A stretch of 64,000 nucleotides of DNA from Callorhinchus milii (lineage: Eukaryota). The notes under the pieces were generated by a model. The model saw nothing but the letters and a program-made list of their open reading frames with translations, ran no database searches and had not been told where the DNA came from. The DNA is taken from assembly GCF_018977255.1 (NCBI RefSeq), contig NW_024704771.1:2108001-2172000 (forward strand), in the 5' to 3' direction. Shown here in pieces: positions 5,888 through 64,000 of the stretch; position 1 is the first letter of the stretch, and the number at the start of each line of letters is the position of its first letter. A program made the position numbers and the translations under genes.

Positions 5888-6307
5888 ATGGCCGGCAGAG
5901 AGCAGGACCAGAGCTTAGCAGAGGATCTCACTTGCCCCGTTTGCCTTGACCTGTTCCGGCATCCGGTTTATCTGTTGTGCGGCCACAACTTCTGCCGCTC
6001 GTGTATCGCAGGGTTTTGGGAGAGGCAGGAGGCTCACTCCTGTCCGGAGTGTCGCCAGTTGTGTCCAGGAAGTGAGCTGAAGCCCAATCGAGTTCTGGCC
6101 AGTCTGGCTGAAAAAGCTCGGAATCTCAGTCTGGATCCGAAACGGGGAGAAAGGAAACATTATTGTGATGATCATCGGGAAGAGCTGAAGCTGTTTTGTG
6201 AGACGGATGAGAAATTGATCTGTTTAATGTGTCTGATTTATCCGGAGGAACAGAATCACAAGTCACACAATGTCATGTCGATAGACAAAGCTGCTGAGAT
6301 CTACAAG
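5888..6307 (+). CDS. TRIM-A exon 1: C3HC4 RING + B-box
   Basis: CPVCLDLFRHPVYLLCGHNFCRSC...CPEC; CDDHREELKLFCETDEKLICLMC...H..H; donor AAG|gtac. Confidence 0.93.
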
Positions 6308-10715: not shown

Positions 10716-11285
10716 CTCCGGCCCGTCTGACTCTGGATCCTGACACAGCCCATCGCTGGCTTATCCTGTCTAAGGATCTGACCAGTGTGAGATTCGGGGA
10801 AAAAAATGAGCAGCAGCTCGGTAACAACTGGAAGAGGTTCAGTTACTATCCCATTGTCCTGGGATCTGAGGGCTTCACATCAGGGAGACATTACTGGGAG
10901 GTGCAGGTGGGCAACAAGACTGAGTGGATTGTGGGATTGGCCACAGAGTCCATTGACAGGAAGCAACAAATCAAATGGTCGCCAGAGGGTGGGGTCTGGA
11001 CTGTGCGGTTGTGGTGTGGGGATTATGCGGCTCTGAACTCACCTCCCACTGTCCTGCCCATGAGAGAGACCCGGGAAGGTCGGAGTTTACTTGGACTATG
11101 AGAGCGGACAGGTGTCATTTTACAATGCTGACAACATGTCTCATCTCCACACTTTCATGAACACTTTCACTGAGAGACTTTATCCTCTCTTCTGTCCCTG
11201 GTATAATAATGATGGGGAAAACTCTGAGCCACTGACAATCTGCTGGTCACAGGATAAACCTGTCTCAGCCTGGCTCAGTCAGTAG
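10716..11285 (+). CDS. TRIM-A exon 6: B30.2 (PRY/SPRY), frameshifted
   Basis: [12 protein letters not shown]...GRHYWEVQV, then shifted frame [15 protein letters not shown]...LYPLFCP; ORF track 10694-11101 and 11091-11285. Confidence 0.9.
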
Positions 11286-11620
11286 CGCTCTGGCCTCTGA
11301 GTCTGAAGATTGTGGGTTCAATCCCCACGTCGGGGATTTTAAGATCAGTGACTCCAGTGCGGTCCAATACGTTGGCACATCATCCCGACGTGAAAGGCAC
11401 TATACAAATGTAATCTTGTTGTTGTTGTTGCAGTCCTGGGGGAAGCTCTGCATTGTCAGAGTTGCCCTCCTTTAGATGGAGTGGACATGAAAGATCCCAC
11501 GGTTCAAAGAGGGGAAGCGAGTTTCTCCCAGTGTTCTGGCCAACAATCCCCCAAATAAGATTGGTCATTTCCTTCATGGCTGTTTGTGTGCAATCAAGTG
11601 CTTTGGGATAACCTCCTGAC
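11261..11620 (+). mobile_element. tRNA-derived SINE, second family (SacSINE1/DeuSINE-like), overlapping the TRIM-A stop codon
   Basis: Head tggctcagtcagtagcgctctggcctctgagtctgaagattgtgggttcaatccccac (A and B boxes). Interrupted by a short L2 tail at about 11370-11428. Orthologous copy at 16875-16975 (minus); other copies at about 2330-2760, 7600-7930, 18650-19080. The family name is recalled, not searched. Confidence 0.75.
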
Positions 11621-16500: not shown

Positions 16501-16951
16501 TCCGCGACTATCATACTATTTCATTGGTCACCAGCACGCAATTGGCAACAACCCAAAGCCTTACATTAAGTCAGACTCATAATACATTACAACAAAGCAA
16601 TGCACTTTTGGGATGAGCTGGGAGGGTTAGCTGATGGATTTCATATTATTAGCTGTGTAATTTATAACCAGGATACAGCTGTGCCTGCCTCAATCACCCA
16701 GTGTTTATACCTTTGGTCGCGTGCGCTGCCGCTCACAAAAAATGCGGGAATAATTCAGAGAGTGGAACGCCAGGCAAGACAAGATACCGACTGCCCAGAG
16801 TGAGCGCGCGCTACATAAATGAAAGTCGCTGTTGTTGAGCCGACCCATCCAGGCCCCACTAATACCATCACAAATGCACTGGAGCGCAATGAGTGTAAAG
16901 TCCCCAACATGTGGCTTGAACCTACAACCATCAGACTCAGAGGCCAAAGCA

Positions 16952-17520
16952 CTACTGACTGAGCCAGGCTGAGACAGGTTTATCCTGAGACCGGCAGATT
17001 ATCAGAGGCTCAGAATTTTTCCCTACAATATAATACCCAGGATTGAACAGAGGATAAAGTTTCTCAGTGAAAGTGTTAGTGAAAGTATGGAGATGAGACA
17101 TGTCATCAGCGTTGTAAAACGACACCTGACCCCCCTCATAGTCCAGGTAAACTCCAATCTTCCCAGGTATCACTGTCAGAGGCAGGCGGGTGGGAGGTGA
17201 GGCCAAAGCCTCAAAACCCCTGCCCCCGAGCTCCACAGCCCAGACCCCACCCTCTGGTGACCATGTGGTTCGTTGTTTCCTGTTGATAGACTCTCTGGCC
17301 ACTCCAACTGTCCACACATTCTTGTTGACCACCTGCACCTCCCAGTAATGTCTCCCTGATGTGAAGCCCTTAGATCCCAGGACAAAGAGATATTTACTAA
17401 ACCTCTTCGAAGAGTCAGGGAGCTGCTGCGGTTTATCTCCGACTCTCACGCCGGTCAGGTCCTCAGACAGGACGAGGCAGGGATGAGCTGTGTCAGGATC
17501 CAGAGTCAGAGAGGCCGGAG
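16952..17520 (-). CDS. TRIM-B exon 6: intact B30.2 (PRY/SPRY)
   Basis: [13 protein letters not shown]...GRHYWEVQV...[15 protein letters not shown]...LYPLFNP...SAWLSQ*. Confidence 0.92.
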
Positions 17521-19653: not shown

Positions 19654-20000
19654 CTGCAATCAAAGTGGAAATCAACACATCTCTAACTGTATCAGTGTGA
19701 GCAGAGAGAACACGCAGGGGGCAGCCTGTCAGACAGCGCTCCCAATGACCAGTGACGCCGTTTACCTGGTTAAACTTAAGTAGCTATCTCGACATATACT
19801 CTGGGATACCAAAGCCTTAGCTCTTGCCAACTAATGCCTAATATTCTACAGAATTTGTAGCAGGGTGCATCGCTCTGGGGACACACGGCAATATTCAGAT
19901 TCTCTTAAGCTCAGCAATGGGCTTCAGTGTGTTTCAGACACTCGGCTGGTGAAAGAAAGAGAGAACAGCAGTCAAGTTATAGACTGTGTTCCTTGTTTAC

Positions 20001-20418
20001 CTTGTAGATCTCAGCAGCTTTGTCTACCGACATGACGCTGTGCGATTTGTGATTCTGTCTCTCGGGAGAAAAGAAACACATCAAACAGATCAATTTCTTA
20101 TCTGTTTCACCAAACAGCTTCAGCTCTTCCCGATGATCACCACAACAATGTTCCCTTTCTCCCCGTTTCGGATCCAGACAGATTTCTAGCTCTTTCGGAC
20201 AGATTAGCCAGAGGTCGACTGGCTCTCAGCTCCCTTCCCGGACACGCCCGACGACACTCCGGGCAGGAATGAGCCTCCTGCCTCTCCCAACAGCCTGCGA
20301 TACACGAGCGGCAGAAATAGTGGCCGCAAACCAGAGAAACCGGATCGTTGAACAGGTCAAGGCAAACGGGGCAAGTGAGATCCTCTGCTAAGCTCTGGTC
20401 CTGCTCTCTGCCGGCCAT
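20001..20418 (-). CDS. TRIM-B exon 1: RING + B-box, frameshifted
   Basis: MAGREQDQSLAEDLTCPVCLDLF...CGHYFCRSC...CPEC; shifted frame HCCGDHREELKLFGETD...IYK|gtaaac. Confidence 0.9.
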
Positions 20419-20999
20419 GTCCCCCTCCACCGCTCACTCCCACAAACCGCTGTCACTCTCAGGCTTTGGGGCTGTGTCCAGACCCAGAATTCAGCAGAAT
20501 GCTTGTTTGGGAGTTTTGTGGCTGTGATCTTCCCCCTGGGCCTGGATCAGAAGGTAATAATAATAATAGTCATGACATTTCCACAGTGGGAGGGTGTGAG
20601 ACGGGGACAAGAGGAAGCGCCGCCTGTGCGGGGGTTTGTGTTGCTGACACTGACCGGAATGGACAGCAGCAATGGCGGTGCCCGGGAGCCATAATGCACT
20701 GCGCGGATGAAAGCGCTCTATCTCTGCGTGACTCCGCGCACGCGCACTGCCCGTTCCTTTGCCGAGCGCTGCAGTGCCGGAGCAGCGCATGCGTGGAGAT
20801 GCCCAGCGCTTGAGATAGAGGGCTTTCTCTGGCGCGATGCATTGTGGCTCCCAGCCCCCGCCATTGTTACCCACCTGAGCCTCTGTCACTGGCTGCACTT
20901 TGTGTCTGGGACCTTGGGCTGAGCTGCTCCAAGAGGTGGAGGTGCCTTTTGCAACGAAATGTGGGAATCGACTCCACCCTCTTCACAGCGATCCTTCCC

Positions 21000-22200
21000 T
21001 TTCCAGTCCTCTCTCCTCTCTCTCTATCAAACCTTCTCATAATTGTCTTTCCAACAATCAGCGCTGTTCCCAACGCCCCGGATCCCCTCCCTGACCTGAG
21101 CTGCCATCCCCCAAATGCCCCCATCCCTGTCGCACATCCTGCGTTACTCCCGCTCGCTTCTATTTTCCTATCGCCCACACGGCTTCCTCTCCATCCAGGC
21201 CCATCCCACAGCTTCCCTGTGCTCCAGGGAATTCTCCACCGGGCTCATTATGGTACAAGCCGTTGGCTGTCCAGCAGTCACCCTGACAGCCCCATCCCCC
21301 CACTTTCCCTACAAGGTCTGTGGGTCCCAGATCACGGATTTTAATCTCTCAATTCACATTCCCTCTCTTCCTGTTAATTCTCCTCCTTTCCCCCACCACG
21401 CAATCCTTCAAACTCCTCGGCAATCTGTCCCCTCCAAACACCCTACAAAATGTCCGTTCCCTCTCCAGTAAAGCACTTAACATCCATGAACTAATTGTCG
21501 TCAAATACATTGACATCCTCTTCCTCACCAAAAATTGGATCACCGTCCCCCCTCTCCGAAGCCACAACACCCAGTTTCACTTTACATCATACCACATATA
21601 TGTGGATGACACCCAATTCTATCTCTCAGCCTCCACCCTCGATCCCAGGTCTATGATGTCCTGACAGACTGCCTGTTGGACACCAAGTCCTGGAAGAGCG
21701 CCAACTTTCTGCAGTTGATCGTCAGCACGAACAAGGCTCTACTGATTGGCTCACTCCAATGCCTCCACACCTCAGGCACTGACAGCAACATTATCCAAGC
21801 ACACTCCACCTCACCAAGCCAGTCAGGAACTGAGGCACCTTCATCGACTCAACTGTCCTTTCTCCCCCACATCTGTGTCATGACCCGCTCTGACTTACCC
21901 CACCTCCGCAACTTTGCCCGAGTCTACCACTGCCTCACATCTCAGGCGGCCAAAACACTCATACACCTCTTCATTACAATCTGCTAACTCGGTCCTTCCT
22001 AAAACCACTCCCTCCCCACCTCCCTCTTCGGGCCCTCTCATTCCTCCCTCCACTTCCTCCCTCTTCTCTCTGCCCTCCATCACTCCTGATCCCAACACCC
22101 TCTTCAGGTCCAACTCCCTGACTGTCTTGCACCTTGGGACGTTCTCCCGACGTGAAGGATGCAACTGTGCAAATGTAATTTGTTGTTGCTGTTGTTGTCC
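21000..22200 (+). mobile_element. Degenerate L2 LINE fragments (endonuclease, RT, 3' tail)
   Basis: QNVRSLSSKALNIHELIV...IDILFLTKNW; HIYVDDTQFYLS; tail ...gacgtgaaggatgc...(GTT)n. Confidence 0.7.
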
Positions 22201-33600: not shown

Positions 33601-36600
33601 GAAACAACTTAACAACACTCAGTAATTGGACTGTCAGAGAGGATTCTAAAGGTCTCTTCATTGTTAAAAGCGAAATAGAAATAATCCGTTCAACCAACAA
33701 GATCAGGTGTCTGATTCACAATTCAGAAAATGAACAAGAAGCAAAACTCCAAATCTCAGGTCAGTAAATGAACAAGAAGGAAATATTAATGATTGTTTGT
33801 TAAATATGATGCAGATTTGTACAGCACATGAAGTGAAAACTCGATCAGTCTGGATGATACGGTCCACTTGAGTTCATCCTTTCAAAATACCAAACTCAGC
33901 ATGTGGTTTGAGAACAACAAATTACATTTGTAAAGTGCCTTTCATGTCAGGAGGACGTCCCAATGTGAGACACACTATACAAAGGTCCAACCCCATGTTG
34001 GACCCGATCTGAAGTTTGGGGTCAGGAGGGATGGAGGGCAGGGTGGGCGGCAGTAGGAATGAATGAATGAAAGCTCGGTGAAAGAGGTGGATCTTGACAA
34101 GTGACTGAGCGAATGGAGGGTCTGTGGATGGAATTCTACAGAACTGGGGCAGAAACAGAGTTAGCTTATCACAAAGATCAGGAGAAGCAGGGCCATGGAG
34201 GGTTTTGAAGCCATTGAATATTCTCATTACAAACTGAAATCAATTCTGATTTCAGTACTCCAGCTCACCCATCCTTCCTGCTAACCTATTCAAACTGTGA
34301 TTATCTTGTGAATTAATCAACACTTCATAACTCACAGCCACCATTGCTTCAGAAAAGGCAAAAGTTGCCTGATCCACCTCACAGTGAAGGGAAGACTACA
34401 GGTTAAGAGCTGAGAAGCTAGCACAACAACAAAAGACATTTGTAAAACATCTTTCAAATTGGGAGGATGTGCGAAGGTGCTGGACTGTCAGGGAAATGGA
34501 CCTGAGCTGGGGAATAGGACATAATTATAGGACATCCACATGGAGGCAGCATTTCCATTCACTCAGGTTCATGAGTTGCCAGGTATTGCTCGGTCATCAC
34601 TGTTATATTGGACAGCACATTGTTAGTGACCGTCTGTTTGATTACCAACAAATGTGGTCATTTAATACATCACTATCTCCTGTTCAGCCTTCTCTTCAAT
34701 TCACTTTGTATCCCTATGGATTTATCTTGTTCCCGATTACCCTCTATTTGCTATTTTTATGGAAGAATGTTTGGGATTCTGCTTTACATTTGTTCCAATG
34801 TTCTCTTTGGGGTCTCAATTTCTATTTACTTGACATTGAAGGATAGAAGTTCCTCCATAAATCACATTTGAAAACTAAAATTAAATAGATATTAGGAATG
34901 GTTTCCTTTCCTCTGGCATGGCAATTCTCTTTCACAAATGCTGCCATTTACGCTCTTCAACTTAAACTTTCACTGAATTCCTTACAGTCTCTCTAGCCGT
35001 TGCCCCATTTCCAACCTGCCCTTCCTCTCCAAGGTGCTGGGATGAGTTGTAGCCTGGAAGATCCATTCCTTCCTTTTCCATCATTTCCTGTAAAATTCTC
35101 TCCAAACTGGCTTCCTCCCTGCCCACAGCACCAAGAGAGCCCTGGACAAAGTCACACCAGATGTTCTCTCTGTTGATGACTAGGGCTCCCTGTGTCTCTT
35201 TGTCCTTCTCTATCGCTCTATCACCTTTCACACTTGTCCACTTCTCCTCCCTGATTCACCTCACATCCTCTGTACTTTGCTAGTTTCATGCCTGTCTCTC
35301 CCAGCATCTCCACTTTATCTTACCAATGGCTTCACATCTGCCCAGTATATTCACAGAGGGGGTTCCTCAAAGCTCCATCTTTGTTCCTTTTCTTTTCCTT
35401 ATCCATACATTCACCCTTGGAGTCTGGCTCTCAGGGACTGGACTAACGGGACGGCCACAAAGAATGGATTTTATTCTGACATTCCCTTAACAACCACATC
35501 CCTTTAGTGCCACTTCAGCTCCAAGACCCCAATTCTCTGCCCAGGAAAAGTACATAATAATAATTGTAGGATTTGATACAGTGCATTATCACGTGTTTGA
35601 ATGAAACATCATAAAGAGCTTCACAGACTATACTCTTAAGTGAATTGACTGTATATTTTGTGGGTGATACACGGCAGCCAATTGCACACAGCAGTGTCCC
35701 ACAAACAGTCACGGATTGAGTGACCCAATTATTATTATATTGTATTTTTTGATGGGATTATTAGCCCTGGAAAGCGATCTTCCAAACAATGAACAAGCGG
35801 GTTCCTACTTAACTGCTAAGTAAACAGAGGCATGTGGAGTAAGGAAACTTGTCTAATGTTTCTCTCTGCCTGGGAATCTAACCCGTGTCTTCTCACATGC
35901 GAGGCGAGCGTTCTATCCAATACACTACCAGGACTTCACTTTGAGTGAAGCCCGTGACAGCTACTGAGCTATTGTGTGTAATACAGTCACTTGAGGGTAA
36001 ATAAAGATATTTATTGTTTTGACATCAGAATAGATACTTAAATGTCTATTTACATTTCTTGACAGACGAGTTCTTTCCCAAAGTGCCAGTGGGTTTGGTG
36101 GTTTCCTCACTGCTCTTAGGACTTGCCATAATGATGCTGAGTGTTCTGGTCGGCTACAGTGTAAAACAGCATCGAGAGATCAAAGGTACGTTCCCATCAG
36201 TAACATCTCTCATCACAACACTTACTGTATGAATGTGTAAGTTCTATAAAACAATTGGTCTCTCCCTTCACTCAGTGACCTCCGGTCTGTTTCATGTCAC
36301 CACCCGATCCTCCCCACCATCAGCAGGTCAGGCTTTCAGCCTCTCTGCCGCCACTCTCTGCAACTCAATCCAAGAATCCTTCTGTCTCGGCCCCTCCCTC
36401 ACCTCGTTCAAGGCCCATCTCATGACCTACTTACTCTGCTTTTTCAGTTAATATTCCCATCTCCCTCTGCTGACCCTCCACCCCGGCTCCCACCTCCAGC
36501 TCAGACCCCAGCATTGTCAGTGCTTTGGGATGTCCCCCGCTGTGGAAGGTGCTGTGTAACTGTAAATTTTATTGTAATTCAAACCTCATATAATTGTGCT

Positions 36601-39600
36601 GAGCTGCACTTTGTGTAGTTTATATCTGTTAATGTTGTAAACATGTAGACTGACCATTAAACTATTCTGGATTCAGAAATCGGTTTCTAACAGTTCTGTT
36701 TTGTATCCTCTAGATCTTGAGAAGAGAGTGGGTAAGTTATCAAAATAAAATAACAATTTTAAATGTGATCAGTTTCATTCACATGCTTCACACAAAACAG
36801 ACATAAGGACATTGAGGTGCAGTAAAAGTACATTTGTTTGCCAACAAAATACCCACTCACTACACTCTCCAGAAAACTCTGTGAAAATCTAACATACAAG
36901 GATTATTATTATTATAGGACAACAACTTGCACTTATATAGCACCCAGCTTTCAGGATAACGTCTCAGAGTGCTTAATAGTGGCAGATATCAAATGCAAGG
37001 ATTATTATTATATTGTGTATTATAAAGAGCCTTTTTTTCGGGGGGGTGGGGGGGGGGCTGGGTGGGAGGTGACCGTAAACACGATCGAAAAGGAAGTGTT
37101 TCAGTTGGGACTTGAAAAAGGGGAGAGAGAGGGCAACAACAACAACAACGGGAACGGGATTGAGTGAGAGTGTTCCAGAATTTAAGGGCGAAGTGGCTGT
37201 ATGCATGATTTCCAATGGTGGAACAGAGGGGAAGTAGACAGAGAAGTAGATAGGTACGTATATGAGGGATAGAGGCTTGAAGGGGTTTAGTTGTAGGGCA
37301 GGGCAGCTGTTGTATGAACACTTTGATCTGAGAGCCCATATAGACTTGGTGGTGAATGGCCTCCTTCTGGGCTGTAAATTTCAATGATTCTATTCCATAA
37401 ATTATTACAGACTGTTTAACTCCAACCATTGGTCTATTTCACATCTTCAACTTTCCCTTCTCTTCCCGAAGACAACATTGGCTTGTGAACATACACACAC
37501 TAAAGGGGGAAAAAAATGAGTGAGCTTCAATGAGGGAGGGAGGGAGAGAAAGAGGGAGAGAAAGAGGGAGGGCATGAGAGAGGAAGAGCGTGAGAGGGAG
37601 GGCGTGAGAGAGGGAGGGCATGATAGCAGGAGGGAGTAAGAGGAGGAGGGTGTGAGAGGAGGAGGGATGGAGGGAGGGAGTGAGACGGAGGGAGAGAGAG
37701 AGATGATGGGGGAGAGAGAGGGAGTGAGATGGAGGGAGCGAGAAGGAGAGAGGGACAGAGGAAAGGAGAGACGGAGGGAGTGAGAGAGGGAGTGAGAGAC
37801 GGAGGGAGTGAGTTAGAGAGAGTGAGGGAGAGGGAGGGAGGCAGTGTGACTTGGTTAGGAGCTGCCAAAGATCTGATCACTTCTTTCTTCTTGGTTCCAG
37901 TGTTGAAAAGGATTCGCAGGTGTGCAGGTAAGAGTCTGAGTGACCGAACCACCAACCTCCAACACACTGACTCCCCACCACCCCATACACAGTCACATCA
38001 CCCTGCCCCCCCCCAAAAAAATAGACTTTCATACCCACGTCCCTCACATATATATTCCCCCCGCGCACACATTCCCCCCCACGTACACATCAACCCCCCC
38101 ACACGCAGATCAATCCCCCTCGCACACATCAAATCCCCTCGTACACATCAACCCCCCCTCACACACATCACCGCTCTACGCACACATCACCTCCACATGC
38201 ACACCCCCCCCACACGCACACATCCCCCACACACACCCACATTCCCCCCACACACACCTTAACACATTTCCCCCACTCACACCCCCCCCCCCCAACACAT
38301 ATATTCATATTTACCTCACACACACCCTCACATCCCCGGGCGCACCCTCAACCACCCACATATCACCCCAAACTCACACGCTCACACTCCGCGTCACACT
38401 TACACACATCCCACCCATACAGTCTCCCTCAAATCACAACCCCCCCCACCCCACACACCATTACACACACCCTCGCAAACCCTCACACACGCTCACATTC
38501 ACCCACATACACACATGCTCATCACCCGCCTCACTCACACCCTCACATTCCCCCCACACACACCTTCATATCCTCACCTCACACATCCTCACACCTCCCC
38601 GACATATCCTCACATCCCCAATCCCACTCAGAGCCTCACATCCGCCACACATATAACATTACATACACCCCACACACTCTCATATGGACTCAAACTCATA
38701 CCTCCAAGTACCCTCACACACATCCTTGTATCCTCCCACACACCCTCACAAACACAACCTCTCACACACTCACATCCCCCTTCCCATTCACAACCTCACA
38801 TCCCCACACATACAACATCAAACACTCCACACACCTTCATACACACCCATACACACCCCCACAAATACCCTCACCACACCCACATCTTCCGCTCACATCC
38901 CACCAATCCCCAAAACACCATCAAGCTCCCACACACCATCACATCCTCCCCCATCACACACACCCTCATATGCCCCAAACACAAGCTCACATCGCCCCAA
39001 CAGACACACACTCAAACCTCCGCAACACCCTCAACACCTCCAACACATACACCATCACATGCCCCCACACACATCCTTGCATCTCTGCCAACAAAACCTC
39101 ACATCCCCCCCACACACACCCTCACATCACCCACACAACTTCACATCACCCACACAACATCACATCCCCTCCCCCACACACAACCCCTCCACACACACTC
39201 ACATCTCCGCCCACACACACCATCATTTCCACCCACGCACACACACTCTTACATTGCCCCCATACACAACCTCACATCCACACACACCCTCACAAACCTC
39301 CACACACCATCACATCGGCCCCACACACACCCTCACATCACACCCCCAAACACAGCCTTACATCCCCCCACACAAAACTTCACATCCCCACGCACACAAG
39401 CTCACATCCCACCTCAAACACATGGCCATTTCCACCCCCACACACACTCACATCCCCCCTCACATGCCCACATTGCCCCCATACGTACGCCCACATTAAA
39501 CCCCACATTACACCCCCCACATACCCTCACATCCCCACACACACCCTCACATACCAGCACCATATCCTCACATTGCCCCCACACATCCTCACCTCCCCTA

Positions 39601-40926
39601 CAGATACACCCTCACATCCCCCACACACACTCACATCCCCCCCCCACACACACCCTCACATACTCACATACAAACCTCACATCTCCCACCAACACACAAT
39701 CTCACCCCACCGCAAACACCCTCACCACCTCCCCACACACCCTGACCGTGCCCACCCCATACACCATCTTATGCCCCCACCCACAACCTCACATAGTCCC
39801 ACATCCTCACACACCCTCACCGCCCTGTAATCACCACCCCCAGATGGACGCTCACCACCCCTAACTCCCCTCACCCCCCTCATACAAACCACCACCCCAC
39901 ACATATCCTCAACCCTCCACACACGCTCACATCCCCACCCACACACACATCTTCACATCCCCCCTCTCACACACATATTCCCCCCGACAAAGACACCCTC
40001 ACATCTCCCACACATGCACCCTGACAGCCCGCACACACACTCACCATCGGATTCCACCCCCCACACACAATCTCACAACCCCCACACACACCCTCAAATC
40101 CCCCTACACAGACATCCTCCCCACATACCCTCACATGCCCACTCACACTCAAATTCCCCACACACCCCCACATCCGCGCCCCACACACCCCCACATCCGC
40201 GCCCCACACACCCCCACATCCCCGCCCACACACACATTCTTACATCCCCCCTCACACACACAGACTGTCAGCCTTTCTGCTGGATTCTGTTCCCAGGAGA
40301 TGTCAATGTTTTACACAAAGGCTTCTCTCCCGGTGACGACGCTGAAGATCATCTTATTTATAATTGTAAATGTGTCTGACATTAATGGTCTGATTCTCCC
40401 TCCAGTTACAGTCACTCTGGATCCTGACACAGCCCATCCCCTGCTCATCCTGTCTGAGGACCGGACCAGTGTGAGACTCGGAGACAATCAGCAGTCGCTC
40501 CCTGACTCCCCGAAGAGGTTTAGTTTGTATCCCATCGTCCTGGGATCTGAGGGCTTCACATCAGGGAAACATTACTGGGAGGTGCAGGTGGGCAACAAGT
40601 CATGGTGGATTATGGGATTGGCCACAGAGTCTGTCAACAAGAATCAACGAATCACTTGGTCAGCAGAGGGTGGGGTCTGGGGGGTGAGGCTGAGGGGCAA
40701 GAGCTATGATGCTCTGTCTTCACCTCCCACCCGCCTGCCCCTGACAGTGAGACTCGGGAAGGTCGGAGTTTATCTGGACTATGAAGAGGGACAGATATCA
40801 TTTTATAACGTTGACAACATGTCTCATCTCCACACTTTCACACAAACTTTCACTGAGAAACTTTATCCTCTGTTCAATCCCTGGTATAATTCTGAGCCTC
40901 TGACAATCTGCCCAGTGACAGGTTAA
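30552..40926 (+). CDS. Butyrophilin (BTN/BTNL-like): signal peptide-IgV-IgC-TM-B30.2, intact, 455 aa
   Basis: Exons 30552-30609, 32916-33263, 33484-33759, 36066-36185, 36714-36731, 37901-37927, 40406-40926. All junctions are phase 1 with AG/GT; total 1368 nt, no stops. AATAAA at 41398-41403. Confidence 0.93.
31590..32570 (-). mobile_element. Degenerate L2 LINE in BTN intron 1
   Basis: [16 protein letters not shown] and downstream L2 ORF2/3'UTR similarity. Confidence 0.7.
32916..33263 (+). CDS. BTN IgV exon (348 nt)
   Basis: [11 protein letters not shown]...DVVLDC...EVRWFR...VYLYKEG...YRHRTQLF...[22 protein letters not shown]. Confidence 0.95.
33484..33759 (+). CDS. BTN IgC exon (276 nt)
   Basis: [10 protein letters not shown]...[19 protein letters not shown]...KGLFIV...IRCLIHN. 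Confidence 0.95.
36066..36185 (+). CDS. BTN transmembrane exon
   Basis: [40 protein letters not shown]|gtacgt. Confidence 0.88.
36714..36731 (+). CDS. BTN 18-nt juxtamembrane mini-exon
   Basis: cctctag|ATCTTGAGAAGAGAGTGG|gtaagt. Confidence 0.75.
37520..40260. repeat. GA-rich tract (37520-37850) and 2.3-kb C/A-rich degenerate minisatellite (37960-40260) in BTN introns
   Basis: (cacacaccctcacatcccc)-like units; the long His/Pro/Thr ORFs here are by-products of the repeat. Confidence 0.9.
37901..37927 (+). CDS. BTN 27-nt mini-exon
   Basis: ttggttccag|TGTTGAAAAGGATTCGCAGGTGTGCAG|gtaaga (VLKRIRRCA). Confidence 0.8.
40406..40926 (+). CDS. BTN B30.2 (PRY/SPRY) terminal exon
   Basis: [12 protein letters not shown]...GKHYWEVQV...[15 protein letters not shown]...PLTICPVTG*. 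Confidence 0.93.
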
Positions 40927-41519
40927 TGTGGTCGAAAGAGCCTCTCATCCACCCACACACTCGTATCCTCCCAACACACACCCTCACATCCCCCCACACA
41001 CAATCCACACATTTCCCCACACAAACTCTCACATCCCTCTCACACACACCCTCACATCTCCCATTGTCACATTGTCACCAGAGAGTGGGGTCTGGGGTGT
41101 GGTATGGGGTCGATGAGGCTCTGACGGCATCTCATTAAAATCTCCCAAATCACTTTGGTATCTATAAACAAGGTGACATGTTGTTCCCCAGTGAGCAGCC
41201 GTGTCTCACTGTGTATAAACACCGTGTATTTTCAGTGACAGCTTTTATAATCTGTAACGTTTCTTATTCACTATAACAATCACCCAAGAAGCGAGATCTT
41301 TAATCCTCACTAAACCGAGGTCCCGTCTGTATCTGTTCAACTGAATATTAATATCCAAACTATTGTCTTTCACTTGCAAAATATTGGATCAATTTACAAT
41401 AAATCATGTTGTGTCATTTTATGTCCAATGATGAAACACAATCTACACACACTCCTCACCCTCTGATACACATACCCTAACCCTCACCCTTTGATACACC
41501 AAAGAACAACGAACTACAT

Positions 41520-43249: not shown

Positions 43250-45583
43250 CACCACTTCATTTCCTTCACCACCTCCACCAGACCCACCACCATCTTCTAC
43301 CGCCCCTGGAAGAAGTTACTCCCACAATCCCTAACCTCTGCCTTGGAGTCCTCTTAACACCTCTCGCTCTGGCCTTCAACCCTCACTGACCCCTCTTCTG
43401 CTCTCACCCTCCTCCACAACACCCTCTCCTCCACACTCGACACTCTTGCCCCCATCACCTCCCATACTGTCTCCTACTCTCGCACCTCCCCCTGGTTCAC
43501 CACCCACCTCCGCTCACTGAAGAGCCAGGTGTGGGCCGCTGAACACACCTGGGTCAAATCTGGCCTAACGGTCCACTGACAAATCTGTCTGGACCTCCTC
43601 AAAATCTACCGCTCCACTCTAGCCTCGGCCAAGTCATCCTTCTACTCCAGGATAATCCTGGAGGCGAAGGACAACCCCAGGCTACTGTTTTCTACCACAT
43701 CCTGACTCCTCCGTCGCCCCCGCCACCCCGCACAGGTCACCTCCTCCAACCTTCACTGCGAGGAGATGCTGGATTTCCTTGAATCCAAAATCAAGGCAAT
43801 CCGCTACGCGGTCACTCCCCCTCCAACTTCCACCCACCCCCCAACCCTTCCCTCCCACATTCCGACTCCTACCCATCCTCCCCTACACACCTTCGAATCC
43901 ATTTCCCCACCCTCTGTCACCAAACTCATCCTGTCCCTGAAACCCACCACCTGCTCCCTTGACCCCATCCCCACGCCACTCCTTATCTCCTTACCTCCTT
44001 GCCCCACTTATCACAGACCTCATCTACCTGTCCCTCTCCTCTGGCTCTGTTCCCATTCCCCTAAAAACTGCTGTCATCACTACCACTTTGAAAAAACCCT
44101 CCCTTGACGCGTCACAGCTATCAAGCTACCGGCCCATCTCCAACCTCCCCTTCCTGTCCAAGGTCCTTGAAAGAGTTGTCGCCTCCCAGCTGCGCTCTTT
44201 CCTCTCCACCCATTCATTATTTGAACCCCTTCAGTCGGGTTTCCGTGCTGCCCATAGCCCTGGTCAAGGTCACCAATGACATCTTGACCATCTACGACCA
44301 GGGCTCCCTCTGCCTCCTCGTCCTCCTCGACCTATCGGCAACATTCGATACGGTCAACCACGCTATCCTCCTCCACCGCTTGTCCTCCCACCTCAACCTT
44401 CAAGGCCCTGTCCTTGAGTGGTTTAGGTCGTACCTCTCCCACCGTTTTCATTTTGTTTCCACAAACGGCTTTTCCTCCACCTCCCGCACTGTCTCGTGTG
44501 GTGTCCCTCAGGGCTCTGTCCTCGGTCCCCTCCTCTTCACCCTCTATATGCTCCCCCTCGGTGACATCATCCGCAGACATGGGGTTAACTTCCACATGTA
44601 TGCGGATGACACCCAACTCTACCTTTCCTCCTCTACCCTCAACTCCATGACCACCGATGTCCTGACAGCTGCCTGTCCGACATCGAGTCCTGGACAAGAG
44701 ATAACTTTCTTCAGTTCAACGTGTGCAAAACTGAGGCCCTCCTGATTGGCTCACGTCAGCGACTCCGCACCTCAGGCGCTGACAGCATAAGCATCCAAGG
44801 CTGCACTCTCCACCTCTCAAAGCAGTCAGGAACCTCGGGGTTCTGTTCGACCCTGAGCTGTCCTTTCTTCTTCATATCCGCACCACAACTCATATTCCAT
44901 CACCTCCAAAACATCGCCAGACTACGGCACTACCTCACCCCTCACGCGGCTGAAACTCCGGTCCACGCCTTTATCACCTCAAGGCTGGACTATGGGAACT
45001 CTCTCCTCGCCGGCCTTCCCGGCCCTCCCTCCACACTGCAGGTCATTCAGAACTCTGCAGCTCGTGTACTGTCCCGCACCAGGCTTCGGGACCACATCAC
45101 TCCTACCCTCACTCACCTCCACTGGCTCCCCATCCCCCAGAGGATCGAATTCAAGATCTTCATCCTCACCTACAAGGCCATTCATAGACTTGCTCCCTCC
45201 TACCTCTCCAACCTACTATCCCCCTACTTACCTGCCCGTACCCTCTGTTGCTCTGGCTCCGGTCTGCTCCACATCCCCCGCCCCAACCGCACTACCATCG
45301 GTGGCCAGACCTTCAGCCTCTCAGCCCCGAGGCTCTGGAACTCCATCCTCCAGTGCCATCGCCGCTTCCTCCCTTTCCTCCTTCAAGGCTGGTCTCAAGA
45401 CCTTTCTCTTTGACCGTGCATTCAGCTCGACTCTCTACCCCCTCCTCACTTCTTCCCTTCCCTCCCCTCACCCTGACCATTTCCCCCCTGCTCGGGTCCT
45501 GACCCAACTGTCCAGTGCCTTGGGACGTCCTCCCGACTTGAAAGGCGCTCTATAAATGGAATCTTTTTGTTGTTGTTGTTGTT
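43250..45583 (+). mobile_element. Longest L2 copy (2.3 kb; tether + RT + 3'UTR), frameshifted
   Basis: LKKPSLD...[18 protein letters not shown]; [16 protein letters not shown]; [11 protein letters not shown]; (GTT)n tail. Confidence 0.92.
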
Positions 45584-59700: not shown

Positions 59701-62700
59701 GTCAGGTTGTGTCAGTGTAGGATTGTTCTCTCTCTCTCTCACCTGCTGAGCCGCTGTCAGGGCACAGATCTGTAGTGACTGGCTCGCTGGCTGTCTGGCT
59801 GACCGGGTTGTGAGCCACACACGTGTAGCTGTCTCGCTCCCGCCCCGTGACGTTGCTCAGATGTAATGTAGTCCCATTGTAGACGACTGTATTACCAGCA
59901 AAGCCCAAAACTTTCTCCCAGTGAAGCAGTGGGTTTGTACCGTTGGGAGCAGAGCAGGTCAGAGTGGCAGCTGGCACAGAGCAGTTAGTGGTTACCTTCA
60001 CCACGGGCTGGGCCACGGGCTCTGAAACACACAATGTCACATCAATGTCAATATCACACAGTAAATGTCACTCTTTACACAACATTGTTTGCTCAGTTGG
60101 GTGTCCGGCTCACCCATTCACTATTCAAACCCCTTCAGTCGGGTTTCCGTGCTGCCCATAGCACAGAAACTGCCCTGGTCAAGGTCACCAATGACATCCT
60201 GACCATCTGTGACCAGGGCTCCCTCTGCCTCCTCGTCCTCTTCGGCCTATCGGCAGCATTCGATACGGTCGAACACGCTATCATCCTCCACCGCTTGTCC
60301 TCCCACCTCAACCTTCAAGACCCTGTCCTTGAGTGGTTTAGGTCGTACCTCTCCCACCATCTTCACTTTGTTTCCACGAATGGCTTTTCCTCCGGCCCCC
60401 GCACTGTCTCGTGTGGTGTCCCTCAAAGCTCTGTCCTCCGTCCCCTCCCCTTCACCCTCTATATGCTCCCCCTGTGGTAACATCATCCGTAGACATGGGG
60501 TTAACTTCCACATGTCTGCGGATAACACCCAACTCTTCCTGTCCTCCTCTACCCTCAACTCCACGACCCCCGATGTCCTGACAGCTGCCTGTCCGACATC
60601 GAGTCCTGGACGAGAGACAACTTTCTTCAGCTCAACGTGCGTAAAACTGAGGCCCTCCTGATTGGCTCGCGTCAGCGCCTCCGCACCTCAGGCACTGACA
60701 ACATCAGCATCCAAGGCTGCACTCTCCACCTCTTAAAGCAGTCAGGAACCTCGGGGTTCTGTTCGACCCTGAGCTGTCCTTTCTCCCTCATATCCGCACC
60801 ACAACTGGCACCGCCTTCCATCACCTCCGGAACATCGCCAGACTACGGCACTACCTCACCCCTCACGCTGCTGAAACTCTGGTCAACCCTTTATCACCTC
60901 AAGGCTGGACTATGGGAACTCTCTCCTCGCCGGCCTTCCCGGCCCTCCCTCCACACTGCAGGTCATTCAGAACTCTGCAGCTTGTGTATGTCCCGCACCA
61001 GACACCGCGACCACATCACTCCCACCCTCGCTCGCCTCCACTGGCTCCCCATCCCCCAGAGGATAGAATTCAAGATCCTCAACCTCACATACAAAGCCAT
61101 TCATGGCCTCGCTCCCTCCTACCTCTCCAACCTACTATCCCCCTACCTACCTGCCCGTACCCTCCGTTCCTCTGGCTCCGGTTTGCTCCACGTCCCCTGC
61201 CCCAACCGCCCTACCATCGGTGGCCGGGCCTTCAGCCTCTCAGCCCATAGGCTCTGGAACTCTATCCCCCAGTGCCGTCGCCGCTTCCTCCCTTTCCTCC
61301 TTCAAGGCCGGTCTCAAAACCTTTCTCTTTGACCGAGCCTTCAGCTCCCCTCTCGACTCTCTACCCCCTCCTCGTTCCCTCCCTTCCCTCCCCTCACCCT
61401 GACCATTTCCCCCTTGCTCGGGTCCTGACCCAACTGTACAGTGCCTTGGGACGTCCTCCTGACGTGAAAGGCGCTCTATAAATGGAAACTTGTTGTTGTT
61501 GTGGAAACCCATCACTGTACTTGTGAAGGTCCAAACCAGATTGGGAGCATCTCTTTAAAGAGACAGTGATATAAAATATTAATGCTACATTTAATGCGGA
61601 GCCCAATAACAGTGGATTCCTGTAGCTCAGCGGTTAGAACCCTCTGAGAAGGCAAGTGACAGACCTGGGTTTGATTCCCGGCAGGCGAAATGTTGGGCAA
61701 GTTTCCGTACTGCACACACCTTTGTTTACTTAGCAGTAAGTAGGAACCCGGTTGTTTGTTAATTGGTGGATTGCTTTATCGGGGGTTACATTTTTTTTAG
61801 ATTGGGCACTCAATCAATGACTGTTTGTGGGATACTGCTGTGTGCAATTGGCTGCCGCATTTTGGGCACAAGATATACAATCAATTCACTTTACTGTATA
61901 TTCTGTGATAAGGTGCTATATCAAAAAGGATTACCATTATTGTTATAATAATCCCTGCATTTTATATATTGCCTTAAAAGACTCTGAGATGCTGCGTTGC
62001 GAGCAGAGTGCTACATAAGTGCAAGTTGTTCTTGTATCATATGGAGATGATTCAAAGCACATATTCAAATGTAAATTGCTGCGTTCATCTACTAACACAC
62101 CGTCTTATCGTGAAATTCTGTTAAGTACAGAATTGAGTGAACTGTGGTTTACTCACAGTTGACTGTGTATTCTGTGGATGAAACCCAGCACAATTACTAA
62201 TGGTTTTCACCCACAGAATACACAGTTTACTCACAGGAACTGCACACAGTCATTAAGTGAGTGAGGATTTTTATCCAGAGGATTGTTGACCAGGACACCG
62301 GGAGGGAAACTCCCTTTTCTTTTCAAATAGGCTCTCAGCAACTCCAACAATGTAACGCTGTTTTAATGATTCTGGAATTCAGTGCCAATGTGGGGTCTTG
62401 AACCAACAACCTCCTGACTCAGAAACGAGAGGAAGCCTAACCGAGTCAGGCCAGCACTCACCAAAGACTTTCAGATGAAATGTGAGCTGGTCTCTCTGCC
62501 GCAGCACCGCTCCCAGGTAGTTTGTTTGGATGCGATATTCTGCACTGTCTTCCATGTGCACATTTTTAAGTAACAAAGAGCCATTGACTGTGAGCTGAAC
62601 CCGGTCTCTATAGAGAGGATGGACAATATGTGCATTTCCTATAGAGAAGGGCTGATCAGAATTCCAGCCGAGGATTTTAATTGAGTATGGGCTTTCCCGG

Positions 62701-62833
62701 CGAGCTGTCACTTCGTATTTCATGTTGTTGTCGTGAATTACAGGGAACTGGACGTCTTGCCCGACGGAGAGATTGGTGACAGTGTCCGGGATGGCCCACA
62801 CAGCCGGGCTGCCCAGTCTGGCACAGAGCAGGA
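56617..62833 (-). CDS. CD2/SLAM-family receptor (IgV-IgC2-TM-short tail ending YxxL); leader exon not located
   Basis: Exons 62833-62462, 60021-59743, 59269-59161, 56815-56780, 56710-56617, all AG/GT with consistent phases (1,1,2,2) and no stops. The V domain lacks the B/F-strand cysteines; the C2 domain has four Cys. Confidence 0.85.
56780..56815 (-). CDS. Cytoplasmic exon (36 nt)
   Basis: tttcag|...DAQESAMCETCR|gtgagc; phase 2-2. Confidence 0.72.
59161..59269 (-). CDS. CD2/SLAM-like transmembrane exon (109 nt)
   Basis: tttcag|GGRYHWVILVVLLLLLSVSLVVGIKHNKTLRRLSAL GG|gtaagg. Confidence 0.85.
59743..60021 (-). CDS. CD2/SLAM-like IgC2 exon (279 nt)
   Basis: EPVAQPVVKVTTNCS...TLTCSA...W...DSYTCVAHNPVS...DLCP|gtgaga. 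Confidence 0.92.
60085..61503 (+). mobile_element. Young L2 insertion in the intron between the IgV and IgC2 exons, antisense to the gene
   Basis: [19 protein letters not shown]; GVPQSSVL; 3'UTR and (GTT)n; very similar to 44220-45583. Confidence 0.92.
62462..62833 (-). CDS. CD2/SLAM-like IgV exon (372 nt)
   Basis: VGQDVQFP...YRDRVQLTVNGSLLLKNVHMEDSAEYRI...TFHLKVF|gtgagt. Confidence 0.9.
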
Positions 62834-63499
62834 CTGAAAGAGGAGAAACACAGCAAAACATTACAAAGTGCAACACGACTAAGAGGTCCTGAGGTGGGGT
62901 TTGTTGGTGAGTCTACAGTGAGTGGACAGAAACATACAGTTGCCAGCAGCGGATCTAAAAGGGGGTCTTTTCACAGAGGATGGTGAAGAGTGTGGAATCC
63001 ATTAAAACCTATGATTGAAGGTAATAGCATCAACCTGTTTAATTCTAACCGTCAGCCTCCATCCCAATCTCACACCAAGTGCAGCAAACCCCTTATTCAC
63101 ACCTTTGTTAACTCCAACATGATTTCTCAAGCTCTCGTCACTGCTCTCCCCAGTTCCACCATCCACAAGACATACAAAACTCTGCTGCCCGTGTTCTCAT
63201 CCACACTAAACTTCACCAATGAGACATTAAACCGAACTCCCCAACTGCCTGTTCAAGTGGACGTTAATGATAGGGTGACCAGACATCCTCATGGACAGTC
63301 CCTGGATGAGGTGTAGTGCCTCTGGCTAAAATGTGTCCCTGTCGAGTTCAACAACAAACAGAGCAAGAACAACAACATCCTAAACCAGATACACTCCTCA
63401 GAGAAACACAGCCATTAATCCAACGAGCTTCTCCAGTAACCGCCAGCATCAGCAATTGTAGGGAATTCAAGTTTTGTTGTATATTGTTCCCAGATTTGG

Positions 63500-64000
63500 T
63501 TTGCAAAACATGGTCACTTTATTCTATCAGGACATCAGTGGTCCTGGAGTTGAGTGTGGAGGTACAGAGATAGAGTTGGGTGTCATCCACATAAATGTGG
63601 AAGTTGACCGCATGGCTGTGGATGATGTCACCAAGAGGAAACATGAAGATATTGGAGAGGAGGGGACCAAGGACAGAGCCCTGAGGAACCCCACATGAGA
63701 CTGTGTGAGGACTAGAGGAGAAACTGTTTGTGAAGATGAAGTGGAGACAGTGTGAGAGGTAGGATCTGAACTATTCACGGACAGAACCATGAAGGTGTGG
63801 TGAGCGGAGAGGTGGTGGAAGAGGATAGAGCAATCAACGGTTTCAAAGGTAGCAAAGAACAAAAGGAGGCAGAGGGAGCCCTGGTTGCAGATGGACAAAA
63901 TGTCATTTTTCACTTTCAGCAAAGCTGTTTCTGTGCTGTGGGCAACATAGAAACCTGATTAGAGGGGTTTGTGAAGGGAGCGGTGGGAGAAGAGAGAGCA
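63500..64000 (-). mobile_element. Degenerate L2 RT fragment
   Basis: LKVKNDILSICNQGSLCLLL...; FMWMTPN/YVDDTQL region. Confidence 0.7.

What the first reader, a model, noticed from the sequence alone, without database searches (positions are those of the whole stretch)
40406..40926. Butyrophilin and neighbouring TRIMs share a recent, mosaic B30.2 exon
Seen: long identical nucleotide runs (e.g. gtcctgggatctgagggcttcacatcaggga, cattactgggaggtgcaggtgggcaacaag) between BTN and TRIM-A. BTN sides with A at [30 protein letters not shown] and PWYN. It sides with B at [23 protein letters not shown] and [11 protein letters not shown] differences cluster in probable surface loops. Established: B30.2 is shared by TRIM and BTN families, but their domains are usually deeply diverged. 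Inference: recent exon shuffling or ongoing gene conversion between a membrane receptor and cytosolic E3 ligases, creating a common pool of sensor domains.
Basis: partly seen in the sequence, partly recalled or inferred. Interest (0 to 1): 0.75.

Follow-up and report, generated by a model that had tools for sequence, protein, structure and literature searches.

The report
Butyrophilin B30.2 exon shared with TRIMs
This is the last exon of an elephant-shark butyrophilin gene, encoding its intracellular B30.2 domain. It belongs to a young, species-specific family of such exons that butyrophilin and TRIM genes in this cluster have swapped whole several times, but it is not a recent patchwork of its two neighbouring TRIM genes, which are distant and apparently broken relatives.

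Summary
Window 40406-40926 is exon 7, the last exon, of a Callorhinchus milii butyrophilin-like gene. It encodes a complete PRY/SPRY (B30.2) domain. The sequence observation is accurate: two TRIM B30.2 exons in the window are 82-83% identical to it, and the quoted identical runs exist.

The "recent mosaic with its neighbours" reading fails.
- The three exons form a near-perfect star: 37, 45 and 41 informative sites for the three pairings, and dS of about 0.30 for every pair.
- No mosaic test is significant.
- Most "sides with A" or "sides with B" positions are family-consensus states where the other TRIM changed on its own.
- The two neighbours are among this exon's most distant relatives in the family sample. 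Both look degenerate, with frameshifts in the B30.2 exon of TRIM-A and the RING/B-box exon of TRIM-B.

The wider idea holds at family level. About 50 C. milii BTN and TRIM B30.2 domains form one clade. Synonymous divergence between BTN and some distant TRIMs is only 0.13-0.17. Strongly supported branches force at least 4 switches between BTN and TRIM contexts. One BTN subgroup carries about 50 bp of TRIM-type intron upstream of its exon but a BTN-type 3' end.

So whole exons were swapped within a cluster. This is a new member of a known kind.

The parts
40406..40926 (+). Exon 7 (last exon) of the butyrophilin-like gene. It encodes the complete PRY/SPRY (B30.2) domain plus the TAA stop and is in phase 1.
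   Evidence: Splice acceptor and frame. 100% match to RefSeq-derived P0003. Pfam PRY 85 bits and SPRY 82.5 bits. AF2 pLDDT 92.9. TM 0.96 to TRIM21 PRYSPRY and 0.94-0.96 to BTN3A1 B30.2.
30552..30609 (+). BTN exon 1: start codon and signal peptide ([19 protein letters not shown]).
32916..33263 (+). BTN exon 2: IgV domain, phase 1.
   Evidence: Pfam V-set.
33484..33759 (+). BTN exon 3: IgC domain (butyrophilin-type C2-set_3), phase 1.
   Evidence: Pfam PF22705, 77 bits.
36066..36185 (+). BTN exon 4: DEFFPK stalk plus the transmembrane helix.
36714..36731 (+). BTN exon 5: 18-nt juxtamembrane mini-exon (DLEKRV).
   Evidence: from the P0003 sequence.
37901..37927 (+). BTN exon 6: 27-nt juxtamembrane mini-exon (VLKRIRRCA).
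10716..11285 (+). TRIM-A B30.2 exon. A 2-nt deletion after 11062 splits PRY plus half of SPRY from the remainder. It has a TRIM-type acceptor flank, and a SINE follows the stop.
   Evidence: Pfam hits on the two pieces separately.
5888..6307 (+). TRIM-A exon 1: RING plus B-box2, intact.
   Evidence: Pfam.
16952..17520 (-). TRIM-B B30.2 exon, with an intact reading frame.
   Evidence: Pfam. Equals P0038.
20001..20425 (-). TRIM-B exon 1. A 2-nt deletion near 20180 puts the RING and the B-box in different frames, and a B-box zinc-ligand Cys is replaced by Gly. The RefSeq-derived model P0038 skips the RING.
   Evidence: The same deletion is present in the duplicated copy L003.
19699..41500 (.). 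Segment duplicated in inverted orientation about 130 kb away on the same scaffold (L003). Identity falls from 99.3% at the left end to about 77-88% around the TM and B30.2 exons.

Best explanation
The interval is the terminal exon of a Callorhinchus milii butyrophilin-like gene with this domain order: signal peptide, IgV, IgC, TM, two mini-exons, B30.2. It encodes the cytoplasmic PRY/SPRY ligand-binding domain.

It belongs to a young, lineage-specific family of about 50 distinct B30.2 domains among the best database hits. BTN-like and TRIM genes share this family; the nine loci fetched all lie along one 4.1-Mb scaffold.

In both gene families the domain is a single phase-1 last exon, so it can be moved as a unit. 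The family record indicates that whole exons changed context between TRIM and BTN genes several times, by ectopic recombination or gene conversion between clustered, often inverted, duplicates.

The resemblance to the two TRIMs in the window is common descent at the deepest level of that subfamily (dS about 0.3). Private changes in two decaying TRIM copies create the illusion of a mosaic.

Shown: the gene structure, the star relationship, the divergences, the clade structure and the flank types. Inferred: the direction of transfer (mainly TRIM to BTN), the mechanism, and any sensing function.
For: Gene model and domain.
Species and family.
Star pattern: 37, 45 and 41 informative sites with non-significant mosaic tests; dS 0.305, 0.293 and 0.332.

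Sixteen-exon nucleotide set. W_BTN dS is:
- 0.11-0.13 to BTN exons P0006, P0024, P0005 and P0028;
- 0.14-0.17 to TRIMs P0020, P0011 and L6_b;
- 0.29-0.30 to TRIM-A and TRIM-B.

BTN-TRIM homology stops at the exon edges, whereas BTN-BTN and TRIM-TRIM flanks align.

Protein trees:
- The C. milii BTN+TRIM clade has support 99/93.
- Joined with shark and teleost TRIM39-like proteins, support is 100/98.
- It is separate from platypus and sturgeon BTNs (98/86).
- Starred branches force at least 4 BTN/TRIM switches.

The nucleotide tree has one strong split (97/100; 100/99). It places TRIM P0011 with BTN group 1, and BTN P0066 and P0044 with the TRIMs.

BTN P0066 and P0044 carry about 50 bp of TRIM-type intron before the exon but the BTN-type stop and 3' flank.
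Against: - Within-exon recombination tests on 15 paralogs are negative: PHI p=0.36, and no GENECONV-like tract is globally significant.
- The AU test does not formally reject a single BTN clade on the 493-nt alignment (p=0.066).
- Most internal branches of the 31-member subclade are unresolved.
- Only 16 exons were examined at nucleotide level. No elasmobranch or other chimaera BTN was available, so timing and direction are open.
- Ig-exon dS among the BTNs (0.0-0.42) is similar to their B30.2 dS. For the window's own gene there is therefore no independent sign that its B30.2 exon has a different age from the rest of the gene.
Confidence: 0.8

Rival explanations
1. One reading: recent or ongoing gene conversion between this BTN exon and the two adjacent TRIM exons made the BTN exon a patchwork of A-like and B-like tracts.
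For: Exact 31- and 30-nt runs are shared with TRIM-A. Motifs alternate between A-like and B-like. One run of 10 consecutive A-like sites at exon nt 118-218 gives a walk statistic of p=0.07.
Against: - The site patterns are near-equal at 37, 45 and 41, and the runs, maximum chi-square and GENECONV-like tests are non-significant (W_BTN-A p=0.59, W_BTN-B p=0.25).
- dS of about 0.30 to both neighbours is two to three times the dS to BTN paralogs and to distant TRIMs.
- 70 of 80 'siding' sites are family-majority states, and 50 of 80 are private changes in the other TRIM.
- The long run is not unusual (p=0.13), and the core it lies in is conserved in all paralogs.
Confidence: 0.04
2. A single capture of a TRIM B30.2 exon by an ancestral holocephalan BTN gene, followed only by gene duplication and divergence. 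The apparent BTN/TRIM interleaving would then be phylogenetic noise in a short, fast-evolving domain.
For: The AU test p=0.066 does not reject one BTN clade. PHI is non-significant. Many unresolved branches. Ig and B30.2 exon dS are similar among the BTNs.
Against: - Starred branches force at least 4 label changes in the 70-row tree. BTN P0131 and P0132 nest in a different starred TRIM subclade, and P0120, P0126 and P0127 lie outside it.
- The 97/100 nucleotide split (100/99) separates BTN group 2 from BTN group 1 and joins TRIM P0011 to group 1.
- BTN group 2 has TRIM-type intron sequence immediately upstream, whereas group 1 does not.
Confidence: 0.13
3. The similarity is due to selection (convergence or strong purifying selection on an old, independently inherited domain) rather than to shared recent ancestry.
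For: The most identical stretch is the invariant structural core. The fold is highly conserved across BTN, TRIM and pyrin.
Against: Synonymous divergence is low and unsaturated (0.13-0.33). dN/dS is 0.5-1.3, which is not strong constraint. Other species' BTN and TRIM domains are only 45-60% identical in protein.
Confidence: 0.02

Closest known systems
finTRIM / NLR B30.2 exon shuffling in zebrafish (van der Aa et al. 2009, PMC2657112)
   Same: A single-exon B30.2 domain is shared between a TRIM expansion and a structurally unrelated immune gene family. The shared domains form a species-lineage cluster apart from other TRIMs, and this was interpreted as exon shuffling.
   Different: The partner family here is membrane butyrophilins, not NLRs. 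The lineage is a holocephalan. Here several switches and a chimeric intron/3'-end flank are seen, whereas the zebrafish case was argued from a protein tree.
Squamate 'harbiTRIM' locus with TRIMs, butyrophilins and orphan PRY-SPRY genes (bioRxiv 2025, PMC12262214)
   Same: A repeat-rich cluster mixes TRIM, BTN and PRY-SPRY-only genes, with recombination or gene conversion among the PRY-SPRY domains at the locus.
   Different: In squamates, GARD and RDP4 found breakpoints inside the PRY-SPRY domain. Here within-exon tests are negative, and the signal is whole-exon exchange with breakpoints at or outside the exon edges. No antiviral function is known for the shark genes.
Mammalian MHC-linked BTN and class-IV TRIM B30.2 domains (BTN2A2, BTN3A1, TRIM21, TRIM7, TRIM11; pyrin)
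   Same: Same fold (TM 0.93-0.96) and the same single last-exon organisation. BTN and TRIM domains are about equally similar to the query, at 42-48% identity. The classic view, from my own knowledge of Henry et al. 1997/98 and Rhodes et al. 2005, is an old exon shuffle between the families.
   Different: The mammalian BTN and TRIM B30.2 domains diverged anciently. In C. milii the two architectures share exons at dS 0.13-0.3 and 70-80% protein identity.

Membership tests
B30.2 (PRY/SPRY) domain | PRY (PF13765) followed by SPRY (PF00622), both above the Pfam gathering scores | tested here: met
   PRY 85.0 bits (cut-off 27.5) and SPRY 82.5 bits (cut-off 26.3) on window:40408-40923.
B30.2 (PRY/SPRY) domain | Bent beta-sandwich fold superposable on solved B30.2 domains | tested here: met
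   AF2 model with pLDDT 92.9 and 12 strands. Foldseek TM 0.96 and rmsd 1.0-1.2 to TRIM21 PRYSPRY; TM 0.94-0.96 to BTN3A1 B30.2.
Butyrophilin (BTN/BTNL) family | Signal peptide, IgV, IgC (BTN-type C2-set), TM, short juxtamembrane exons, then a cytoplasmic B30.2 encoded by the last exon; phase-1 exons | tested here: met
   Seven exons mapped with canonical AG/GT sites, all in phase 1. Pfam V-set, C2-set_3, PRY and SPRY. Matches P0003, named 'butyrophilin subfamily 1 member A1 isoform X2' by its source.
Butyrophilin (BTN/BTNL) family | The B30.2 domain is orthologous to BTN B30.2 domains of other vertebrates | tested here: not met
   C. milii BTN B30.2 domains group with C. milii TRIMs (99/93) and with shark and teleost TRIM39-like proteins (100/98). 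Platypus BTN1A1 and sturgeon BTNs form the sister clade (98/86). Sampling of other chondrichthyans was not possible.
Class-IV TRIM E3 ligase (the two neighbours) | RING, B-box2, coiled coil and B30.2 in one continuous reading frame with the zinc ligands intact | tested here: not met
   TRIM-A has a 2-nt deletion inside the B30.2 exon. TRIM-B has a 2-nt deletion between RING and B-box, also present in its duplicate L003, and a B-box Cys changed to Gly. The RefSeq-derived model P0038 has only PRY and SPRY.
Gene-conversion mosaic (BTN exon as recombinant of TRIM-A and TRIM-B) | Parent-specific informative sites spatially clustered, or shared tracts longer than chance | tested here: not met
   Runs test p=0.25, maximum chi-square p=0.70, walk p=0.07-0.60. 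GENECONV-like p=0.59 (A) and p=0.25 (B). Longest exact run p=0.13.
Exon shuffling / whole-exon exchange between gene families | The exon tree is incongruent with gene architecture, with strong support | tested here: met
   At least 4 BTN/TRIM switches are forced by starred branches, and 7 is the most parsimonious count. A 97/100 nucleotide split mixes the architectures. The AU test on nucleotides alone is borderline (p=0.066).
Exon shuffling / whole-exon exchange between gene families | Flanking non-coding sequence of donor type carried into the recipient gene | tested here: met
   BTN P0066 and P0044 share about 47-50 bp of TRIM-type intron (84-94% identical to TRIM flanks) upstream of the exon, with a BTN-type stop and 3' flank. 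For the window's own exon (BTN group 1) no TRIM-type flank remains, so the test is inconclusive for this copy.

The most novel reading that the evidence does not exclude
In the elephant shark, a multi-megabase cluster keeps one common, fast-evolving pool of B30.2 cassettes. These are repeatedly exchanged as whole exons between membrane butyrophilins and cytosolic TRIM ligases. The same ligand specificities would then be deployed both at the membrane (inside-out signalling) and in the cytosol (ubiquitin ligase). That would be a modular sensor system already present at the base of jawed vertebrates.
Probability: 0.3. Interest if true: 0.6.

Novelty: new member of a known kind. Interest (0 to 1): 0.4.

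Why it matters
B30.2 domains are the ligand-binding modules of TRIM5alpha, TRIM21, pyrin and BTN3A1. How new specificities spread between receptor architectures is an open question in innate immunity.

This shows that in a holocephalan, the slowest-evolving and earliest-branching jawed-vertebrate lineage sampled, BTN and TRIM genes still share B30.2 exons at low synonymous divergence. Visible flank chimeras accompany this. It extends the zebrafish TRIM/NLR and squamate TRIM/BTN cases to cartilaginous fish, and suggests cassette exchange is an old, recurrent property of these clusters.

For annotation, 'BTN1A1' and 'nuclear factor 7 / A33-like' names in this genome say nothing about orthology of the B30.2 domain.

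The specific claim of a mosaic with the neighbouring genes should not be carried forward.

Tried and rejected
- **Three-sequence mosaic tests** (runs, maximum chi-square, 3SEQ-like walk): not significant.
- **Within-exon recombination on 15 paralogs.** PHI was p=0.36. A GENECONV-like permutation gave a few pairwise hits: P0024 with TRIM P0045, W_BTN with P0024 (p=0.008), and W_BTN with TRIM P0011 (p=0.03, at alignment nt 373-440). None survived the global correction.
- **A homogenised core tract behind the long identical runs.** Rejected. Synonymous polymorphism is present in that core across paralogs, and runs of codons without synonymous polymorphism are no longer than chance (p=0.77).
- **Independent homogenisation of B30.2 relative to the Ig exons.** Not supported. 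The dS ranges overlap.
- **Loop enrichment of A-B differences.** Not significant.
- **dN/dS above 1 in BTN clade I.** The point estimate is 1.26, but the bootstrap interval of 0.78-2.16 includes 1.
- **My first BTN model.** It spliced the TM exon directly to the B30.2 exon, which was wrong. P0003 shows two mini-exons between them.
- **Ig-based search for BTN orthologs in other chondrichthyans.** It returned almost only C. milii proteins.
- **Look-ups of P0033 and P0131 loci.** Nothing was on record.
- **Literature searches.** No paper describing this C. milii family was found.
- **N-runs.** Locus L003 spans the position matching the window's first N-run (25893-26807). Those letters were not read or used.

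Full report
**What is at the coordinates.** The window is Callorhinchus milii (elephant shark) DNA. It corresponds to scaffold MU249860.1 at about 2.108-2.172 Mb, placed by the position of P0038. The interval 40406-40926 starts right after a ...ctccctccag acceptor and ends with TAA. In frame 3 it encodes 172 residues with no stop. Pfam scores are PRY 85 bits and SPRY 82.5 bits. The structure model has pLDDT 92.9. It superposes on TRIM21 PRYSPRY (TM 0.96) and on BTN3A1 B30.2 (TM 0.94-0.96).

It is exon 7 of a butyrophilin-like gene. The exons are:
- leader, 30552-30609
- IgV, 32916-33263
- IgC, 33484-33759
- TM, 36066-36185
- two mini-exons, 36714-31 and 37901-27
- B30.2, 40406-40926

All exons are in phase 1. 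The product equals database protein P0003, which its source names 'butyrophilin subfamily 1 member A1 isoform X2'.

**The observation.** The quoted identical runs are real and recur in TRIM-A on the plus strand. They recur with one mismatch each in TRIM-B on the minus strand. The window holds exactly three B30.2 exons, 82-83% identical in nucleotides.

Two things were missed. First, TRIM-A's exon has a 2-nt deletion after 11062, so its last third is in another frame. Second, TRIM-B's first exon has a 2-nt deletion between the RING and the B-box and has lost a B-box cysteine. The same deletion is present in a duplicated copy elsewhere on the scaffold, so it is not an assembly slip. The database model for TRIM-B (P0038) avoids the RING altogether. 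TRIM-A and TRIM-B are whole-gene inverted duplicates, 80-86% identical including their introns.

**Is the BTN exon a mosaic of its neighbours?** No.
- Informative sites split 37 (BTN=A), 45 (BTN=B) and 41 (A=B).
- NG86 dS is 0.305, 0.293 and 0.332, which is a star.
- The order of A-like and B-like sites is not clustered: runs p=0.25, maximum chi-square p=0.70, 3SEQ-like walk p=0.07-0.60.
- With 13 further paralogous exons as reference, 32 of 36 BTN=A sites and 38 of 44 BTN=B sites are the family-majority state. In 24 and 26 of them respectively, the deviating TRIM's base is private.

The patchwork is therefore what two independently drifting copies produce.

The 31-nt run is not unusual at this identity (p=0.13). 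The 62-nt stretch with one mismatch is unusual (p=0.002). It is the invariant core [21 protein letters not shown], which still shows synonymous polymorphism across the family. A-B differences are not enriched outside beta-strands (p=0.49).

**The family context.** A search with the domain returned about 100 C. milii entries, which collapse to about 47 distinct domains. These are BTN-like and TRIM ('nuclear factor 7 / A33-like') proteins, 62-80% identical to the query and many on the same 4.1-Mb scaffold. Other species reach at most 60%.

In protein trees the C. milii BTN and TRIM domains form one clade (99/93). Together with TRIM39-like proteins of a shark and teleosts, support is 100/98. Platypus BTN1A1 and sturgeon BTNs form a separate clade (98/86). 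Starred branches force at least 4 BTN/TRIM switches, and 7 is the most parsimonious count.

I fetched nine paralogous loci and extracted 13 more exons with flanks. For the window's BTN exon, dS is:
- 0.11-0.13 to the BTN exons P0006, P0024, P0005 and P0028;
- 0.14-0.17 to TRIMs P0020, P0011 and L6_b, which lie hundreds of kb to about 2 Mb away;
- 0.29-0.30 to its own neighbours.

The nucleotide tree has one strong split (97/100; 100/99). BTN group 1 plus TRIM P0011 sits on one side. All other TRIMs plus BTN group 2 (P0066, P0044) sit on the other. Holding all BTN exons together costs 31.7 lnL units, with AU p=0.066.

**Flanks.** BTN-TRIM homology ends at the exon edges. It begins about 8 nt inside the 5' end and stops at the stop codon. 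BTN-BTN and TRIM-TRIM flanks align for hundreds of bases.
- BTN group 1, including this exon and the misnamed P0005, has the acceptor context ...ggtctgattctccctccag|TTACAGTC.
- All TRIMs have ...cccctcactccactttgtgttatttctctctctctcag|CTCCGGCC.
- BTN group 2 has that same TRIM-type sequence for about 50 bp upstream. It also has the TRIM-type 15-nt segment near the 3' end of the exon.
- BTN group 2 then ends with the BTN-type CCAGTGACAGGTTAATGAGGAGG stop and 3' flank.

This is physical evidence that a TRIM exon, with a little intron, sits in a BTN gene.

Within-exon recombination tests across the family are negative (PHI p=0.36; no globally significant tract). The unit of exchange therefore appears to be the whole exon. 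Ig-exon dS among the BTNs (0.0-0.42) spans the same range as B30.2 dS. The whole BTN/TRIM radiation is young, and this gene's exon need not be younger than the gene.

**Mechanism.** Established: in both families the B30.2 is one phase-1 terminal exon (PMC2657112). Shown here: the genes lie in a repeat-rich cluster with tandem and inverted duplicates. One example is the inverted duplicate of window 19699-41500, whose identity falls from 99.3% to about 80%. Inferred: ectopic recombination or gene conversion between such copies moves the terminal exon between architectures. TRIM to BTN is the more parsimonious direction, because the deeper branches are TRIM-dominated.

Selection on the domain is weak to diversifying. 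dN/dS is 1.26 (0.78-2.16) among group-1 BTN exons and 0.58 among intact TRIMs. Variation is concentrated in residues 24-43, 65-73, 80-101 and 157-164. Function is inferred from homologs only: an intracellular ligand-binding module.

**Comparison and novelty.** The nearest published parallels are the finTRIM/NLR B30.2 exon shuffle in zebrafish (PMC2657112) and the squamate harbiTRIM locus. In the latter, TRIMs, butyrophilins and orphan PRY-SPRY genes recombine (PMC12262214). No paper on this C. milii family was found. PMC12841164 only lists C. milii butyrophilins and their chromosomal location.

**Verdict.** The sequence observation is real. The 'recent mosaic with neighbours' reading is not supported. 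The family-level idea of a shared exon pool is supported. This is a new member of a known kind and of moderate interest.

**Limits.**
- Only 16 exons were analysed at nucleotide level.
- There are no other chondrichthyan BTNs in the trees.
- Absolute dating is not possible without a neutral rate.
- The TRIM-A frameshift rests on one assembly.
- The window's N-runs were left untouched. Locus L003 spans the site of the first N-run, and that part was not read.

Noticed in passing
window 1-1260 (+): The 3' two thirds of an intronless HSP70 gene (Pfam HSP70, E=4e-146, profile positions 210-598) runs off the left end of the window. An HSP70 next to TRIM and BTN genes recalls the MHC class III/I neighbourhood of other vertebrates.
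   Followed up: partly
window 19699-41500 vs L003 (MU249860.1:2270218-2300981, reversed): An inverted segmental duplication lies about 130 kb away. It carries a TRIM-B-like exon 1 and a second BTN gene (P0024). Identity falls stepwise from 99.3% (19699-23285) through 95-97% and 92% to 86% at the Ig exons. It is about 77% around the TM and mini-exon region and 82-88% at the B30.2 exon, so the two halves of the duplicate have different ages or were homogenised separately.
   Followed up: partly
window ~20180 (-) and L003 ~295-735: TRIM-B exon 1 and its duplicate share a 2-nt deletion between RING and B-box and a B-box Cys-to-Gly change. The L003 copy has a further 1-nt deletion inside the last RING Cys pair. 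The RefSeq-derived model P0038 starts in an upstream exon (20790-20656) and has no RING.
   Followed up: yes
window 11062/11063 (+): A 2-nt deletion in the TRIM-A B30.2 exon leads to a premature stop 12 codons later. No database protein corresponding to TRIM-A appeared among the hits. It may be a pseudogene, but an assembly error cannot be excluded from one copy.
   Followed up: partly
L007:17026-17556 (P0066) and L008:18539-19060 (P0044): Two BTN genes have a B30.2 exon preceded by about 50 bp of TRIM-type intron and followed by a BTN-type stop and 3' flank. This is a chimeric junction marking a TRIM-to-BTN exon transfer.
   Followed up: yes
L004:32365-32871 (P0005): The protein named 'nuclear factor 7, ovary-like' (307 aa, PRY/SPRY only, in a 23-kb gene model) has a BTN-type B30.2 exon with BTN-type flanks on both sides. 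An Ig-only gene (V-set, C2-set_3) lies upstream in the same locus. The name is likely a mis-annotation.
   Followed up: partly
L002:13308-13826 (TRIM P0011) vs window 40406-40926: TRIM P0011 has TRIM-type 5' flanks but an exon that groups with BTN group 1. It shares with the window's BTN exon the otherwise unique [11 protein letters not shown] stretch (alignment nt 373-440). Pairwise p=0.03, but it is not globally significant.
   Followed up: partly
window 37400-40300 and 40940-41070: About 3 kb of CA/C-rich low-complexity repeats (CACACCC-like; GC skew -0.86) fill the intron before the B30.2 exon and resume after its stop. Similar repeats precede the B30.2 exon of the other group-1 BTN genes and of P0044.
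   Followed up: no
window 11263-11360 (+) and 16876-16975 (-): In TRIM-A and TRIM-B, the sequence right after GGATAAACC looks like a tRNA-derived SINE head (ggctcagtcagtagcgctctggcctctgag...ggttcaatcc). Their reading frames run 10 codons further than those of the other TRIMs. The first 13 nt after ATCTGC resemble the BTN-type 3' end rather than that of the other TRIMs.
   Followed up: no
window 59705-60067 (-) and 62382-62912 (-): Two further Ig-superfamily exons lie on the minus strand. One is Ig_3/Ig_2-like (Pfam E=3e-7). The other is a V-like ORF with no Pfam hit. They probably belong to another IgSF receptor gene.
   Followed up: no
window 3133-3801 (-), 44092-44742 (+), 46245-46970 (-), ~60000-61500, ~63500-63960: Transposon debris: a DDE_1 transposase fragment, several reverse-transcriptase (RVT_1) ORFs in copies 70-91% identical to each other, and a SINE present at 4214-4464, 9123-9354, 32563-32814 and 55433-55636.
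   Followed up: no
window 5464-5654, 37530-37850, 50868-51837: Long imperfect GA/CT-rich tandem arrays. They translate as SLSLS or ERERE runs in several frames, giving spurious long ORFs.
   Followed up: no
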